Source: Bigelowiella natans CCMP2755
Taxonomy: Eukaryota; Protista; Cercozoa
DNA length: 64,000 bases
Reading direction: 5' to 3'
NCBI GenBank assembly: GCA_000320545.1
Contig: ADNK01000007.1
Coordinates: forward strand, 62,001-126,000
Shown here: positions 2,554 through 26,258 of the stretch, piece by piece
Position numbering within the stretch: position 1 is the stretch's first letter
Layout of the letters: each line of letters starts with the position of its first letter
The notes under the pieces: generated by a model
The model's input: the letters and a program-made list of their open reading frames with translations, nothing else
The model's database searches: none
What the model was told of the DNA's origin: nothing
Translations under genes and position numbers: made by a program

Positions 2554-3309
2554 GCGCGCGCGCACACACTGATTCACTAGGACGCTTGTATGCACGAATA
2601 CACTGCATTACCCCTTGCTGTTTGAGTGTTTGCGCCATTGCATGGCCACGATGCCAGTCGTAAGATGCCTGGAAACCAGAGAGGAAAGTCATGACGATGA
2701 TCACGTAGACGCCCGCCCCCCCTCTCTAACCCTCCCCTTCCCTCTCTTTTATCCTTGTCCAATCTCTCACCGAGTAAGCGAACAGTGTGCCATCTGCGTT
2801 GAACGCGCAAGAGGAAACGGGCATGGAAGACCGTGCTGACATCTTCAATCTAATTCGTGAAAGATAACACAGCAAAGAAGCTATGACCAATGTGCATGTA
2901 CGATTGTGCCGATGACCGCGTGTATTTGGAGGGGATGAGCGAATCAGCAATGCAATTGTGGATCTCCCTCTCTTTTCGGTGGCGAGAAAGCAAGGACCTC
3001 GACTTGGAATCTTTGTCCCAGAAGCAAAAGCTACCATCAGATCCAACGGTTGCGAGGGTACCGGACTGCGGGTGGAGGGGAACATCAACACAGTCACATC
3101 ATCATCATCATTATTACCATCATAACTTGCATCATTGAATCAATGAATGTTTTTGGCGTTCGAGAAGCAGCGGAACAGAGGGAGATAGACGGAAGGTAAA
3201 TTCTTGTTATTCCAAAGATGAGGGGGTGACAGCAGCAGCAGCAGCAGCAAGCAGCAAGCAGATACTCTACCGGATGAAATGCGATATCGTTGACAGGATA
3301 CACCTCACT

Positions 3310-3344
<35 letters not shown>

Positions 3345-3551
3345 TATAATCAATTAAGCATTTTAATAAATATATATTATTATTGTCAATTTAGTAGCGA
3401 TGATGACGATAATAATAATTGCGAGCATGACTTCTTATTGGAATCCTCGCAAACAAAGAAATAGAGAAGCAATTGTGTGACGGAGAGAGCGGTTTGTGCA
3501 ACAACAGCACTCTCTTCGGCAGCATTTTTAACTTCTTTTGCATCATCATTG

Positions 3552-3582
<31 letters not shown>

Positions 3583-3779
3583 GACATTCAAAATTGTTAT
3601 ATAACCAGTTGTTGGGCATCGTGCCTTGGGTATTGACTCGGTGACATTTGAACGCAAAATTCTTCTTCGTGTCTTCAGTCATCGCAAACACACCATGAAT
3701 CATTTCACATGCACGTTGTGTGTGTTTGTTGGCGTGTATCGTGGCCGTGTTATTTGATTTGATTTGATTTGATGTGTGT

Positions 3780-3818
<39 letters not shown>

Positions 3819-4491
3819 GCGATTGTTGTTCAAATAAAGAACAAACGCTTACCTGCTTCGCTAATGTACTCGACGCTGACCCGGCCTTCATTTGCACCTT
3901 TGTGTTTCCATGTGATGAGTTATTCTGAAACGTCACTGCGTATCTTCGTTATATCATGTTTGGCCAAGTACCTATGCAGCAACCCTTACAATCGCGGAAA
4001 ATGCTGACGCTAAAATTAGGGGGGGAGAGGGATTACGGTACAAGGAGTGAGTTTCAATTCATGGTGATGATAGAGCCGGTATTTTGCCGAAGAATACTGA
4101 TAACTCTTTATCCTGATTCATCGGCGTATTTTCCATTGCCCATGATAGCATTTTGCTCATCGATGCTCTTACTTACCCAACGTTCCAAAACTCAAGCGAA
4201 AATGCCGTTATATTTGTCCTGTGAGGCGACCAATGCACTCTCGCAGGACAAAAACGAATCGATATTTTCAGTGCTGTATTGTTATTGTTCCTATGTGTTG
4301 CTTCTTTGACCTTCGCAGTTGGCTCTTTAGTTGTGAGACTTTCTCCTTTGAACATGGCATTGTTTGTCAGTGGCGTGATTTACACGTCGTTGCTATATTT
4401 GGAAATCGCCATCTTCATCATCAGCATTCCCGTATCGACCACCACCAGCATAAGAAGTAGCATCTACTACGACTAAAAACGTTATAGCTCA

Positions 4492-4525
<34 letters not shown>

Positions 4526-7071
4526 GCTGGTGGTGGTGGTGGTGGTGGTGGTGGGTGAGTCTTGCTGTACTATTATCAACCTTGAATGGCTGAGCTGGAT
4601 TGTTGAGGTCGTAAATGATGATCTTTCTGTCGCTTGTGCAGACAACCTTGCACGGATCGAACATAACAAATAGTTACGGCGATGCAGAGAGTAAGGACAG
4701 TAACAGCAGCAGCAGCAGGAGGAGGAGGAGGAGGAGGAGGAGGAGGATGAGAGAAGAGGGAAAAACAGCATCATTTTGTGCGATATAGTTTGGTCTTTTG
4801 GCCCTTCGTTTTTATAATCATTCTTTTTCTTTTTCTTCTTCTTCTTCTTCTTCTTCTTCTTCTTCTTCTTCGTTATCACCATAACAGCTCCACGCACATC
4901 CATCGCGTAGACCTTCGAGTTCCCTTTGAACAGCGGGCAAACAGCAAACAACCACACGTTTAGATCAACAACCAAGCCCACGTGCTTCAGCGCACATATT
5001 CGGGTCGTGCGAAGAAACCCCTCGCCTGATCTCACCTGGCAATCTGATGGTGTGGAGAAGCTGGGGCGCTGCAGGTGACGATGGTGATGGCGGCGGTGCA
5101 GAGACGTCCCAAAACTTAATTGTTCCATCGTAAGATCCCGTAATCACTAACGACATAGAGATCATTTGACGAAGCACACGATGATAAACCATCTCCAAAG
5201 ACAACGCAGATCTTGTGTATGTATACACCCCACACGATATTGATGCTCTCTCCATTCATGCGGTTAGGAGATGCTGATGGGTGTCTATGACTAACAACGT
5301 CATCATTATTGCGGTTATCTTCATCATCGTCGTTATCTTCATCATCGTAACGTTCTTCTTCACCCACCGCATGGCCTCGGCATATCGGACCAGAAAATCC
5401 TCTTGATCGGAGCATCGTGCTTTGCGATCTTAAATAATCATGAATGTGTGGTGGATGGAAGAGAAAGAGAGGCGGAGGAAGAGAGGATTATGGACGAGGA
5501 AAAGGGGTTTGAATGCAATAAGACGATAAATGTGACGTTAAACATGCTCGTTAGATTCCAAGGTTCGGTTATTGACACGTCATCATCCACCAGACAAAGT
5601 CAGTGAGGAGGCTATGAGGGTATGCCACTACCACTAGTACTACTACTACTACTACTACTATCATCTCTATGGTCATCAAGTACCGGTCTTATCTGGTTGT
5701 TATTCAACGTCCAGATGTATCTGAGAAAGGGGGAGGAGGAAAGATGGAAACCGCCAAAGATCATCATCGAAGCAGACGATTGAGGAGGAAAAGAAGGAGA
5801 ATTGTTATAATCTTTGTTCCACATTCCTACACATCTACCAATTCTGATATATAATGACATAAAGATCTCTTCTCAACAAAAGTTGTCAAGACTGTCGAAA
5901 TAATCTCGACCCTGTGTTGTCGCAGCCTCCGATGAGTATAGCAGTCCCGTCGCTTTTCCAATTACAACTGATGAACGAGTACAAGGAAAGGATAGAAGAT
6001 GATGCTGATGACGACACGGTAACAATACACTGAACTCCCTTCGAGGAGACATTGCAATTGAACATGAAAATAAATCTAGGTTCCAACAAGCCCAGATGAT
6101 AGGGAATAACTCTGTTTTCGCTATTACCAGAGTGGTGGAGCTTGGAGCTGCTGCATTGCTATCGGATTGCCTAATCCAGCAAATCCAATCATATAATATT
6201 TACACATTACATTTTTGATGTTGATAGAACACAATATTTAGCAATCACATCCACGTCCTTGGTTCCTGTATTGTTTGTAAAATGATTCATCTATCTCTTC
6301 CCCATCTCTGTGCTCTATTCCCCCTCCCAAGTTCGTTGTACGCACTATGCACTGTAGGCTGCCCTTGCTGGCGTGCCTGGCCAAAGGAAGTCTGGAAACT
6401 ACTGGGAGCGTTGTTAGCGTTCATGCTCACTTCCCAGCACCTGTATGTTATTATCAATATAATATTTACGCGTGCGATCGATGGGGTATGCCAGTGGAGC
6501 AAGGCAGCGAGAATAATGGCGATGAAACCCACCTGACAGTTTTGTCCCACGACGTTGCCACGAGATAGGTCTTCCCAACCAACCCAGCAGCGTTGGGGGG
6601 GGAGAACGCCAGACACGAGATGTCATCAACAGGGGGGTTGGACGCCTCATGGTCGTTCTCTGGGTTCGCTTTCTACAATATATAACCAGTTGTCCAGTTG
6701 GTAAGCAAGTTAGAGAGAGATGGTACACAATATCCTTCACCTATTTTCATACGTATCCAAGATATATGACAACATACCACCTGGTTTGCAGCATTAGGGA
6801 CATTACTGAAGGCTGTTGATTGTTGCTGCTGCTGTGATGTGCCCGCGGTGCTTCCCCCTCCCCATGATCCGGATAGCCATGATCCTCCCCGGAGTCGCAG
6901 TAGCCTAGCTTTCTTGCTCCATGTGCTTTCTCTACTCCGTACACCCACCTTGCGCTTTAGCAAGGGTCCTTTTAGTTCCCTCGTATCTACACGATAGAAG
7001 GTGCAGCTCCATAGACACAGGAGCAGGAGCGGAAGCCGGGGGAGGGGCGCGGAGAGCCAGGACGACCCCAT
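2264..7071 (-). CDS. RAE1: mRNA export factor Rae1/Gle2 (WD40) with N-terminal bipartite leader; about 20 exons
   Basis: Phase-consistent GT-AG exons: 7071-6781, 6672-6533, 6440-6346, 6170-6128, 5967-5911, 5720-5684, 5428-5368, 5146-5036, 4923-4880, 4646-4581, 4345-4311, 4009-3972, 3897-3853, 3672-3606, 3307-3271, 3065-2998, 2849-2771, 2668-2612, 2438-2388, 2293-2264. Rae1 motifs: PPVDDISCLAFSP, LVATSWDKTVRCWEV, KHDAPIK, ITGSYDGTIKFWD, EGRVSVEYI, NFAFKCHR, VYPVNDIAFHP, GTLATVGSDGSFCFWDKDSK, FAYSASYDWHRGH. Confidence 0.95.
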
Positions 7072-8543: not shown

Positions 8544-8938
8544 TTACCACTGCACCGCTGCCACCATAATTCAGCAGCTAGCTCGTAGCAGCACGGCGAA
8601 GTAAAGCTTTGAACGCCCGGAGATTTCCGACATGCACTCGAACAAGCTTCCACCTAGAAGCACCGATTTCTGGGCTACATGCTGTTATTGTAGGTGTCAT
8701 ATGGAAAAAGTTATCCCCTGTCCCCCTCCTTTTTCCATTCTCAGGTTTTCATAAACTACGAGCGGGATCTGCTCTTTGGCGACACGGCAGAGGATGAATT
8801 GGAATATGAGGCAGAAGGAGAGAAGAGAGGGGCCAAGAATGAGAATGAGAATAAGCCGATCATATGTCAGAGGTGCAATCCTGCCCTTTTCCCCTCTTAT
8901 ATTTGCATCCTTCTAATGTTAATCATAGTGTTAGCCAG

Positions 8939-24231: not shown

Positions 24232-26258
24232 TCACTCAACACCAATCACCCTCCTCCCTCTCTCGGCTAGCCTCTCTCCCAACACCACACCACTTCTGAC
24301 AAGGATAACCTTGATATCTCCATTCGCCTCAAGCTCGAAATCCAATATCATAGGGTCATATTGGTAGCTCTTTCCGGAGGGAGGGTCCATACCGAGTATT
24401 CGGCTCTCATAGGGGGCGGAGTGGAAGAAGTACTCGAGCTCATACAACGCGTTCTTATTGTAGATCACCGCAGGATCCGTCTTGAAATTGTGGAATGCGA
24501 TTGGGTAGTTCGAGCAGCAATTCTGCTTCACCTAGTATGAAGTATAATATTAACAAAAAGAAGAAATGTTAGAATCTCATGAGGTTACGATAGTCGTTGC
24601 TGAAACTAAATTCCTCGTATCTAGTGCGTGCTGAAAACCATCAATGTAATACGCCTAGATTTTGTCGTAACTCAAGCGAGGGAGAAGACGTGATGAGCCA
24701 GTGCAGCAGCAACGAGGAAAGTACAGCAGCAATGGGGTAGAGAGGGAGGGGAGGGGAGGGTGTAGAACGACCTGTTTCTGGCCTATAGCACCCTTATAAT
24801 GCCAGAACCAGTCATGCGGGTCGCTTTTATACTCTATGTTGAATAGATGATCTCGCGGCCGGAAAGGCAAGAAGCGTTGGCGGCCGTTTCTATCGAGAGA
24901 GTCGGTGGGAACTATGTTTAGGTCACGCAAGCAGCCTCCCGTCTGAGGGTCCTCTCCTGCACCCGCCCGATCGGCGCATTGCGTACCACCGCACTTGTAG
25001 CACACCTTGGGAATGTTTTGGAGCCGGATCGATAGCCTCCTCACGGCCTCACGGGAGAGCACGTAGCATGTTCCCGAGTTATAAATGAGATTCTGACGCC
25101 AGCGGTGGAAGAGTGTGTGACCTACGTACCTGCGAGCGGTAGCAATAAAAGTAGTAGTAGTAGTAGTAGTAGTAGTAGCAGTAGCATGAATGGAAAAGTT
25201 AGAGGGAACCGACAAGTGGGGCAAATGGGAGGAGGAGGAGGAGGAGGAGAAGGCGATGGAGTTGTGGAGGAAGAGGAGAATAATAATACAAGCACACCAC
25301 GTTTGAAAGTAGCAGGATACATAAAAGAGTACAAAAGCATCTCGCACGTACAAACTAGATACAGTTGCAAATCAATTACCATGGCTGGTCTGGGTCAAGG
25401 TAGGAGCCGAAGACACGCATGTTCTCAGCGATGAAGAACGAGTCGAAATCCACCTTGGCAATGTAGTCAAATTTGTCTAAATACTCCTCTCCAGCCAATT
25501 TCCACGCACGCCACATCTTCTCCCAAATGTTCCTCGACTTAGGGTCGTCGTCGCGCGTCATAGGGACTCCCATTATTAACTCGCCAGTGCGCATGCGCTC
25601 TGGAAGCCACGGCAGATCGCTCGCTGGGTGCTCGGCTAGCGCGTTTGCAGACACGACGAAACGCAACACTTCTACGTGACTTCCCCACGTTTTCAGAATT
25701 GCGTGATACTGCTCCTCGACGCGGGGGTTATGCTTGGGAGGCCAACTAATTGGTACCATGGCCATTAGTCGTGGTTTCCATTTAGACGGGTGAAACTTGG
25801 TGGTGATGGTGGAGCTGCTGCTGCTGCTGACCCCCCCATCATCACTGCTGGGAAGATTATCGTGATGGTGCTTTGGCGGGGAGACTGAAATAATATTTTC
25901 TTCAACCGCTGCTGGTTTGTTTTGTCCCTTGTCGTACTGCTTTCCCTGCTGCTGATATTGGTCCTTGGAGAGTTCAGAATCAGAAATTGGGACTAATCCC
26001 GGAATCTGCAATTTATCAAACGAACGCAATCAGTTAAAAATCAGTGAAATAAAGGCCCATAAATTAGAAAATTCACATTTACAACACGAAATACAGCAAG
26101 GCTTCATTAGTAGGCAACGGGACCATATGCGATGATGCGTAGTAGTGGCCAGAATCGGCTCCCAGGCGCTCATGTGCCCAGAAATTGAAGCAGAGGTAAA
26201 CGACTGCTATTGCACAAAGAAGAGCACACGAAGTGTCTACATCCCGAGAGTTCATCAT
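24232..26258 (-). CDS. GT31 family C1GalT1-like beta-1,3-galactosyltransferase (type II membrane); 4 exons
   Basis: Exons 26258-26124 (TM anchor CALLCAIAVVYLCFNFW), 26005-25380, 25129-24772, 24531-24232. Motifs ILKTWG, FDYIAKVDFDSFFIAENMR (DxD), YNSGTCYVLSREA, GEDPQTGGCL, DRNGRQRFLPF, CCSNYPIAFH. Confidence 0.88.

What the first reader, a model, noticed from the sequence alone, without database searches (positions are those of the whole stretch)
6883..6900. Targeting leader of Rae1 ends exactly in the ubiquitin tail LRLRGG: candidate deubiquitinase-processed presequence
Seen: exon 1 encodes a signal peptide (LPLLLLCLWSC), a Lys/Arg-rich transit-like segment, then LRLRGG (residues 58-63, CTG CGA CTC CGG GGA GGA). 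It is followed directly by SWLSGSWGGGSTAGT..., which resembles the Gly/Ser-rich natural N-terminus of Rae1. No ubiquitin fold precedes the motif. Established: LRLRGG is the ubiquitin C-terminus that DUBs cleave after, and the maturase for periplastid-imported proteins in nucleomorph algae is, to my knowledge, not well defined. Inference: the leader is removed in the endosymbiont cytosol by a repurposed DUB acting as a transit peptidase, or the GG is activated ubiquitin-style during import. I cannot check whether this motif has already been described.
Basis: partly seen in the sequence, partly recalled or inferred. Interest (0 to 1): 0.88.

Follow-up and report, generated by a model that had tools for sequence, protein, structure and literature searches.

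The report
Conserved ubiquitin-tail motif ends targeting leader
A transport protein (Rae1) that this alga sends to the relic nucleus of its swallowed green alga carries an address label ending in the exact last six residues of ubiquitin. The same six residues sit at the same spot in the unrelated cryptophyte algae, which points to an undescribed site where the label is probably cut off.

Summary
On the minus strand, window 6883-6900 encodes LRLRGG, residues 58-63 of exon 1 of a Rae1/Gle2 gene. It follows a signal peptide and a basic leader with net charge about +8.

Within this genome alone the hexapeptide is not beyond chance. There are 84 six-frame sites, 27 in ubiquitin-type genes, and the rest sit at background level.

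It is, however, under selection. Nine related leader-bearing Rae1 sequences carry LRLRGG+Ser at the same junction. One is Guillardia theta, read from genomic DNA because its public gene model has the wrong first exon. Their leaders are otherwise unalignable (12% identity against 100% for the motif), and the motif codons differ synonymously.

The motif belongs to leaders, not to Rae1. In this genome, leader-bearing copies of NTF2, CSE1 and two more importin-beta proteins carry [R/H]LRGG ahead of the conserved protein (at its start in NTF2 and CSE1). Leaderless copies lack it.

No ubiquitin fold precedes the motif. I found no paper describing it.

The best reading is a ubiquitin-tail-mimicking processing site, cut in the periplastid compartment by a ubiquitin-tail-specific protease. 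Neither the cleavage nor the enzyme has been shown. No leader-bearing UCH was found, and the USP genes could not be inspected.

The parts
7003..7071 (-). Start codon and signal-peptide-like segment (residues 1-23, MGSSWLSAPLPRLPLLLLCLWSC). The end of this segment is approximate.
   Evidence: ORF and translation. The hydrophobic run LPLLLLCLW passes the M+hydrophobic filter. No signal-peptide predictor was available.
6901..7002 (-). Basic transit-peptide-like segment (residues 24-57), with 11 Lys/Arg and 3 Asp/Glu.
   Evidence: Read directly from the translation. No Pfam domain is present.
6883..6900 (-). LRLRGG (residues 58-63), identical to ubiquitin residues 71-76. This is the conserved junction motif and the proposed cleavage site, with the cut falling after 6883.
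   Evidence: Invariant in 10 of 10 orthologous leaders, with synonymous codon differences.
6781..6882 (-). Remainder of exon 1 (residues 64-97): the Ser-Trp / Gly-Ser-rich presumed N-terminus of mature Rae1, with a Gln run. A GT donor follows at 6780-6779.
   Evidence: The S.W..SWG pattern is shared with the cryptophyte-side sequences.
6673..6780 (-). Intron 1 (GT...AG, 108 nt). It is inferred and has no RNA evidence.
   Evidence: Sequence, and reading-frame continuity with exon 2.
6533..6672 (-). Exon 2: KANPENDHEASNPPVDDISCLAFSPPNAAGLVGKTYLVATSWDKTVR, the N-terminal Rae1 block and first WD repeat.
   Evidence: 53-60% identical to P0005, P0014 and P0020. The best library hits are Rae1 fragments.
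2753..6532 (-). Remaining Rae1 exons, about 13 short exons separated by microsatellite-rich introns. HSPs lie at 6442-6404, 5978-5910, 5431-5369, 5147-5061, 4921-4874, 4658-4581, 4345-4313, 3898-3854, 3673-3610, 3306-3268, 3083-2997 and 2851-2753.
   Evidence: Colinear tblastn matches to G. theta Rae1 (P0021) and to P0022, P0014 and P0005. Exact splice sites were not determined.

Best explanation
The gene is the endosymbiont-type, leader-bearing Rae1 of a chlorarachniophyte. The organism is very probably Bigelowiella natans; that is my inference. The protein enters the ER through its signal peptide, and the basic transit-like segment then carries it into the periplastid compartment (PPC), the remnant cytosol around the nucleomorph. 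LRLRGG marks the end of that leader. It is a selected, ubiquitin-tail-mimicking junction motif. Most likely it is a processing site: a ubiquitin-tail-specific cysteine protease (a deubiquitinase or a related enzyme) working in the PPC cuts after Gly-Gly and releases mature Rae1 starting at Ser64. Removing the leader in the PPC would also stop the protein from travelling on into the plastid stroma. Shown here: the position of the motif, its conservation, its recurrence in other leaders, and the absence of a ubiquitin fold. Inferred: the cleavage, the enzyme class, the compartment and the sorting consequence.
For: (1) LRLRGG followed by Ser is invariant in 10 leader-bearing Rae1 sequences: this window, G. 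theta genomic DNA (L080:5913-6212) and eight metagenomic relatives. Their leaders are at chance identity (0.12) and vary from 57 to 131 residues before the motif. (2) The codons differ synonymously (CTG/TTG/CTC, CGA/CGG/AGG, GGA/GGT/GGC/GGG), so selection acts on the peptide. (3) Conservation starts abruptly at the first Leu and runs on into the mature protein, which places the motif at the leader/mature border. (4) The motif goes with leaders, not with Rae1. In this genome NTF2 has ...STVSHLRGG|SSSMSGQSNEMVAKQF. The second CSE1 has ...HMVTRLRGG|SEQALAEAFEKSL. In a prospective look at the IBN_N family, two further genes have MAAGSAVAVAMAVLTLL...FLRRLRGG| and ...SIGHLRGG|. The leaderless paralogues have none. 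Three of eight genes by chance has P<=4e-6. (5) Ubiquitin machinery exists in such compartments. A B. natans nuclear gene encodes a ubiquitin monomer with SP+/TP+ (PMC3542566), and a PPC deubiquitinase, ptDUP, is part of the import machinery of red-lineage complex plastids (PMC3101018). (6) This genome's own polyubiquitin is cut at LRLRGG|S, the same P1' residue. (7) From general knowledge: residues 71-76 are the part of ubiquitin held in the active-site cleft of DUBs, and LRGG/RLRGG peptides are usable DUB substrates.
Against: No cleavage has been observed, and no RNA or proteomic data could be laid on the locus. Cellular DUBs generally need the globular body of ubiquitin, and tail peptides are poor substrates (general knowledge). 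No ubiquitin fold precedes the motif. No leader-bearing DUB was found: the two UCH-type genes lack leaders, and the 63 USP matches could not be inspected. Outside Rae1 only [R/H]LRGG is kept, and P1' is not always Ser (Leu and Ala in the two extra importin-beta genes). In those two genes 69 and about 85 residues separate GG from the IBN_N match, so a position at the leader/mature border is shown only for Rae1, NTF2 and CSE1. A recognition or retention role without cleavage would give the same conservation pattern.
Confidence: 0.55

Rival explanations
1. The motif is a recognition, retention or docking signal and not a cut site. It is bound by a PPC factor, for example a ubiquitin-tail-binding pocket of the import or sorting machinery, and stays on the mature protein.
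For: Conservation and recurrence in leaders fit this as well as they fit cleavage. The conserved block continues without a break into the mature N-terminus.
Against: In NTF2 the motif lies four residues ahead of the ancestral start Met, and in CSE1 it lies directly ahead of the start of homology. That is where a leader would be removed. Identity to the exact scissile tail of ubiquitin is most simply read as a protease site.
Confidence: 0.18
2. It is a processing site, but it is cut by a protease that is not a DUB, such as a serine protease or metalloprotease with Arg-Gly-Gly specificity. On this reading the likeness to ubiquitin is convergent.
For: No leader-bearing DUB was found. Outside Rae1 only four or five residues are kept.
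Against: In Rae1 all six ubiquitin-tail residues are invariant in two lineages. CSE1 has HMVTRLRGG against ubiquitin's HLVLRLRGG. A non-DUB enzyme gives no reason for Leu71 and Arg72 to be kept.
Confidence: 0.15
3. It is a relic of an ancestral ubiquitin-X fusion, like the ubiquitin-actin and ubiquitin-P1 fusions of this genome. The ubiquitin body was lost and the tail has no present function.
For: Ubiquitin fusions are unusually common here (L029, L033, L051, L052). Faint upstream likeness to ubiquitin exists: REST...LRLRGG and HMVTRLRGG.
Against: A functionless relic would have decayed like the rest of the leader (12% identity), yet the motif is 100% kept with synonymous changes. As an account of origin this is compatible with the best explanation.
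Confidence: 0.05
4. It is a chance match in an Arg/Leu/Gly-rich leader.
For: There is no genome-wide excess of LRLRGG-coding sites (173 against 188 for the control). About one chance occurrence per proteome is expected.
Against: The motif is invariant at the same junction in 10 sequences from two lineages, and [R/H]LRGG recurs in four other leader-bearing genes.
Confidence: 0.02
5. It is a Rae1-specific N-terminal functional motif of the mature protein, unrelated to targeting.
For: The motif and the following S.W..SWG block are conserved together.
Against: Ordinary leaderless Rae1 proteins lack it (P0022 and the Rae1 fragments P0006-P0012). The motif recurs in unrelated leader-bearing proteins.
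Confidence: 0.05

Closest known systems
Ubiquitin fusion precursors (polyubiquitin, Ub-L40, Ub-S27a; in this genome also Ub-actin and Ub-P1/P2) cut by deubiquitinases after LRLRGG
   Same: The scissile hexapeptide is identical. A protein with its natural N-terminus follows directly. P1' is Ser, as at this genome's polyubiquitin junctions.
   Different: No beta-grasp ubiquitin domain precedes the tail. Instead there is a signal peptide plus a transit-like leader of variable length and sequence.
SELMA import machinery with its PPC deubiquitinase ptDUP in red-lineage complex plastids (PMC3101018)
   Same: A ubiquitin system and a DUB act on freshly imported preproteins in the periplastid compartment. 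Cryptophytes belong to this lineage.
   Different: There the DUB is thought to remove conjugated ubiquitin from Lys side chains, not to cut the preprotein backbone. From memory, no SELMA has been recognised in chlorarachniophytes.
Transit-peptide removal by stromal processing peptidase
   Same: A targeting presequence is removed after membrane passage.
   Different: It is an M16 metalloprotease that acts in the stroma on a loose motif. The maturation of PPC-resident proteins is not described in the papers I could read.
Viral papain-like proteases with DUB activity (coronavirus PLpro, LXGG cut sites). This is from general knowledge.
   Same: A bare linear LXGG/RLRGG motif without a ubiquitin fold is enough for cleavage by a ubiquitin-tail-specific cysteine protease.
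   Different: It works in a viral polyprotein context and has no role in organelle targeting.
Bacterial double-glycine leader peptides cut by C39 peptidase domains of ABC exporters. This is from general knowledge.
   Same: An N-terminal leader ending in Gly-Gly is removed by a papain-like protease in step with membrane transport.
   Different: It is bacterial, has a different upstream consensus, and has no ubiquitin-tail identity.

Membership tests
Rae1/Gle2 WD40 mRNA-export factor | Colinear similarity over the whole seven-bladed WD40 body to known Rae1 proteins | tested here: met
   Twelve or more colinear exon-sized HSPs, 44-54% identical, to G. theta Rae1 (P0021), P0022 and fungal Gle2. 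The best library hits of exon 2 are Rae1 fragments.
Endosymbiont-type (nucleomorph-related) Rae1 of chlorarachniophytes (Irwin and Keeling 2019, PMC6411479) | A second Rae1 copy that carries an N-terminal signal peptide and branches with algae | tested here: inconclusive
   A signal-peptide-like N-terminus is present. The host-type copy was not recovered.
Bipartite periplastid/plastid targeting leader | An N-terminal hydrophobic signal peptide followed by a basic, acid-poor transit-like stretch | tested here: met
   MGSSWLSAPLPRLPLLLLCLWSC, then 34 residues with 11 K/R and 3 D/E. The same architecture appears in G. theta and in metagenomic relatives.
Bipartite periplastid/plastid targeting leader | Demonstrated localisation in the periplastid compartment or nucleomorph | not testable with these tools
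   This needs GFP fusions or fractionation.
Ubiquitin / ubiquitin-like proteins | A beta-grasp ubiquitin domain (PF00240) ahead of the C-terminal tail | tested here: not met
   No Pfam hit at E<=10 in the leaders of this gene, G. theta, P0014, P0017, P0019, NTF2 or CSE1. Leader length varies from 57 to 131 residues.
Ubiquitin / ubiquitin-like proteins | A C-terminal LRLRGG tail | tested here: met
   Exact hexapeptide.
Deubiquitinase substrates | Hydrolysis of the peptide bond after Gly-Gly by a DUB | not testable with these tools
   There are no proteomic or biochemical data.
Deubiquitinase substrates | A DUB present in the same compartment (a leader-bearing DUB gene) | tested here: inconclusive
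   UCH-type genes L105 and L106 have no leader. There are 63 USP-domain matches, but their DNA could not be fetched.

The most novel reading that the evidence does not exclude
A ubiquitin-tail mimic ([R/H]LRGG, complete LRLRGG in Rae1) is the general maturation site of proteins sent to the periplastid compartment and nucleomorph in both nucleomorph-bearing lineages, chlorarachniophytes and cryptophytes. A resident deubiquitinase acts as the long-sought presequence peptidase of that compartment. Cutting the leader off there is also the sorting step that keeps these proteins from continuing into the plastid stroma. The site may have arisen from leader-ubiquitin-X fusions that lost the ubiquitin body.
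Probability: 0.35. Interest if true: 0.9.

Novelty: new variant of a known kind. Interest (0 to 1): 0.8.

Why it matters
How proteins that stay in the periplastid compartment are matured, and how they are told apart from plastid-stroma proteins, is not settled. None of the papers I could read names the peptidase. A short, exact and conserved motif at the leader/mature border turns this into a testable question: predicted neo-N-termini, point mutants and activity-based probes. It would be the first case of a targeting presequence removed at a bare ubiquitin tail. It would link the ubiquitin machinery known from periplastid import to presequence removal. It would give a simple sequence mark for predicting periplastid and nucleomorph proteomes. 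It also shows that the public G. theta Rae1 model has a wrong first exon. That explains why earlier work saw no signal peptide on cryptophyte Rae1 (PMC6411479).

Tried and rejected
- Exon 1 alone found nothing in the 90%-clustered protein library, whose length window excludes full-length proteins.
- The junction-region search with P0014 returned only three sequences.
- No chlorarachniophyte orthologue from another genus was recovered, and this window's own annotated protein was not in the representative library.
Exons were used one by one, so B. natans is missing from the tree.
- The search for the host-type Rae1 copy gave only generic WD40 genes.
- Searches for Elf1, RanBD, importin-alpha, PCNA and H2A found only leaderless copies, so they say nothing either way.
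- Six other exact-LRLRGG sites lie 25-130 residues after a Met plus a hydrophobic run (7 of 57 sites including this one, against 2.4% background, P about 5e-4). The four followed up (L026, L048, L078, L079, refetched as L091-L094) have no recognisable coding sequence downstream. L013 looks microsatellite-derived, and L031 is followed by low-complexity sequence. I leave all six unresolved.
- A ubiquitin fold hidden in the leader: rejected.
- A chance match: rejected.
- A leader-bearing UCH: none found.
- Papers: no paper holds LRLRGG or RLRGG together with transit peptide, periplastid or nucleomorph. The three papers that hold RLRGG and plastid are unrelated by title and abstract and were not opened.
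Full report
**What is there.**
The finding lies on the minus strand. The reverse complement of window 6883-6900 is CTG CGA CTC CGG GGA GGA, which reads LRLRGG.

It is in frame in an ORF that opens at ATG 7071, just after an in-frame stop. The ORF reads MGSSWLSAPLPRLPLLLLCLWSC (signal-peptide-like), then FYRVDTRELKGPLLKRKVGVRSRESTWSKKARL (11 K/R, 3 D/E), then LRLRGG (residues 58-63), then SWLSGSWGGGSTAGTSQQQQQSTAFSNVPNAANQ.

Exon 1 ends at 6781 with a GT donor. Exon 2 (6672-6533) follows an AG and runs into the first WD repeat. About a dozen further short exons down to about 2753 align colinearly with Rae1/Gle2 proteins.

Splicing is inferred from consensus sites and homology only.

**Which organism.**
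The assembly has 91.4 Mb in 3736 contigs at about 45% G+C. It encodes:
- polyubiquitin with an extra Ser at each unit junction
- ubiquitin-actin fusions
- ubiquitin-P1/P2 fusions

From memory, these are hallmarks of chlorarachniophytes. The ubiquitin-fusion ribosomal proteins of B. natans are mentioned in PMC3542566. I take the genome to be Bigelowiella natans or a very close relative. This is an inference.

An endosymbiont-derived, signal-peptide-bearing Rae1 in chlorarachniophytes is already published (PMC6411479). The gene is therefore not new. The motif is.

**Is the hexapeptide more than chance? Within this genome: no.**
- The degenerate coding pattern occurs 173 times against 188 for the reversed control.
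- The CTN-type excess (66 against 43) is accounted for by ubiquitin genes.
- I fetched all sites. They gave 84 true LRLRGG sites in six frames. Twenty-seven follow a ubiquitin or UBL domain, and 57 are elsewhere, mostly in short non-coding frames.
- About one chance occurrence is expected per proteome.

**Across species: yes, decisively.**
A search of protein-cluster representatives with exon 2 gave P0005. Its relatives in the 90%-clustered library are P0013-P0020, from metagenomes, and the nearest named protein is Guillardia theta Rae1.

Every one of these that includes the N-terminal region has a different signal-peptide-like start, then an unalignable leader of 64-131 residues, then LRLRGG, Ser, a Trp/Gly/Ser-rich stretch, ...NPE(N/Q)DPE and the WD40 body.

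The annotated G. theta protein lacks all this. The genomic DNA (L080, JH992976.1), however, encodes one continuous frame that ends at a GT donor: MAACRGRGGGACATLFLSCCLLLSRIG...EVGGLRLRGGSSWSSWGSSLTSDKKGYNPENDPE. The public model took its first exon from another frame. This probably explains why cryptophyte Rae1 was reported without signal peptides.

I anchored the ten sequences on the motif and measured mean pairwise identity:

| Region | Mean pairwise identity |
|---|---|
| Leader positions -40 to -4 | 0.12 |
| The six motif positions | 1.00 |
| The following Ser | 1.00 |

The codons differ synonymously between loci, including CGN/AGG for Arg and CTN/TTG for Leu, so selection acts on the peptide.

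The nine cryptophyte-side sequences form one fully supported clade with G. theta. The WD40 body of the window's protein is no closer to that clade than to other Rae1 proteins (54% against 44-51%). The two lineages therefore look separate. A proper tree with red and green algae could not be made here.

**The motif belongs to leaders, not to Rae1.**
Earlier notes of this scan list other leader-bearing proteins of this genome that end in LRGG or RLRGG. I treated these as leads and checked two from the DNA.
- The NTF2 copy on C3434 reads ...LLGPGLLILAACYLTI...STVSHLRGG|SSSMSGQSNEMVAKQFVDFYY, while the other NTF2 gene has no leader.
- The second CSE1 gene on C2909 reads ...HMVTRLRGG|SEQALAEAFEKSL, while the other CSE1 has no leader.

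I then ran a prospective test on a family I chose myself, the importin-beta N-terminal domain. Among eight distinct genes:
- the CSE1 copy carries the motif
- a 1371-residue ORF carries it (MAAGSAVAVAMAVLTLLTPSSFILF...FLRRLRGG|LCATS)
- a third gene carries it (...SSILSSIGHLRGG|ANEEDM)
- the three genes with an evident leaderless start carry none

In the second and third of these genes, GG lies about 85 and 69 residues ahead of the domain match, so the border position is less sure than in Rae1, NTF2 and CSE1. Three of eight by chance has P at most 4e-6, even with generous residue frequencies.

Seven of the 57 non-ubiquitin LRLRGG sites lie 25-130 residues after a Met plus a hydrophobic run, against 2.4% of background positions (P about 5e-4). 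Apart from Rae1, I could not show that these are genes.

**What it is not.**
No ubiquitin domain is detectable in any of the leaders, and their lengths vary widely. This is a bare tail, not a degenerate ubiquitin. Ordinary Rae1 proteins lack the motif.

**Mechanism.**
The most economical reading has three steps:
1. The signal peptide takes the chain into the ER.
2. The basic segment takes it across the next membrane into the periplastid compartment.
3. There a protease specific for the ubiquitin tail cuts after Gly-Gly and frees Rae1 with Ser64 at its N-terminus.

Support is indirect:
- The motif is identical to the six residues that DUBs hold in their active-site cleft (general knowledge).
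- It sits exactly at the leader/mature border.
- A B. natans ubiquitin gene carries a bipartite leader (PMC3542566).
- A periplastid deubiquitinase belongs to the import machinery of red-lineage plastids (PMC3101018).
- This genome's own polyubiquitin is cut at LRLRGG|S.

Evidence against:
- Nothing shows cleavage.
- Tail peptides without the ubiquitin body are poor DUB substrates (general knowledge).
- The two UCH-type genes have no leader.

A binding or retention role without cleavage, or a non-DUB peptidase, remain live rivals. I give the cleavage-by-a-ubiquitin-tail-protease reading about 0.55. I give about 0.9 to the weaker statement that this is a selected, functional junction motif of periplastid leaders.

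A possible origin is leader-ubiquitin-X fusions that lost the ubiquitin body. Two observations hint at this, but it is untested: the many ubiquitin fusions in this genome, and HMVTRLRGG in CSE1 against HLVLRLRGG in ubiquitin.

**Novelty.**
Full-text searches found no paper that connects LRLRGG or RLRGG with transit peptides, periplastid targeting or nucleomorphs. The papers on complex-plastid targeting that I read do not name a peptidase for periplastid residents. Other agents of this scan have reached a similar reading for NTF2 and CSE1.

Three things make the Rae1 case the clearest:
- It has the complete hexapeptide.
- It is verified in G. theta genomic DNA.
- It has nine independent-looking leaders on the cryptophyte side.

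I rate it a new variant of known kinds (cleavable targeting leaders; DUB-cut ubiquitin fusions), of high interest, with the mechanism still to be shown.

Noticed in passing
L080:5913-6212 (G. theta JH992976.1, about 725350-725649): The public G. theta Rae1 model (P0021) starts with an exon taken from the wrong frame. The continuous frame encodes a signal peptide, a leader and LRLRGG, and ends at a GT donor.
   Followed up: yes
L012, L015, L050 (77-residue units); L044, L049 (79-residue units): The polyubiquitin genes have one extra Ser (LRLRGG|SMQIF) or three extra residues (SGE) at each unit junction. The single-residue insertion is, from memory, a cercozoan signature.
   Followed up: partly
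L029, L033, L051, L052, L067: There are ubiquitin-actin fusions, ubiquitin-P1/P2 ribosomal fusions, and an Sde2-like UBL ending LRLRGG|KGG. This genome is rich in ubiquitin fusions.
   Followed up: partly
L041 (G000:C2868, about 24637-24653, minus strand): An SBDS-like reading frame (…QIVTLKQGKKSFEVAV…) is preceded by …SLLIRSLRLRGG|KGKGGGGKG. The upstream exon was not found, so it is unclear whether this is a UBL fusion or a leader.
   Followed up: partly
L090/L115 (G000:C2909, CSE1 copy): The leader end HMVTRLRGG matches ubiquitin residues 68-76 (HLVLRLRGG) at 7 of 9 positions. The window's Rae1 has REST...LRLRGG against ubiquitin's KESTLHLVLRLRGG. This may be a relic of a ubiquitin fusion.
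   Followed up: no
P0018 and P0019 (L083:1921, L084:1365): These leaders hold a second RLRGGG about 25 residues upstream of the junction motif.
   Followed up: no
L121 (G000:C1218, about 221747-221872, minus strand) and L119 (G000:C2405, about 8796-8933, minus strand): Two further importin-beta-family genes carry RLRGG or HLRGG upstream of the IBN_N domain. One is a 1371-residue intronless ORF with a clear signal peptide. They are candidate nucleomorph transport receptors.
   Followed up: partly
window 3300-4900, minus strand: The Rae1 introns are packed with microsatellites: AAG, CCT, CAC/CAG, GTA and AC runs.
   Followed up: no
L026, L048, L078, L079 (G000:C1825, C3182, C3312, C3578): These are other exact LRLRGG sites 39-68 residues after a Met plus a hydrophobic run. 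No recognisable domain lies downstream, so they are unresolved.
   Followed up: partly
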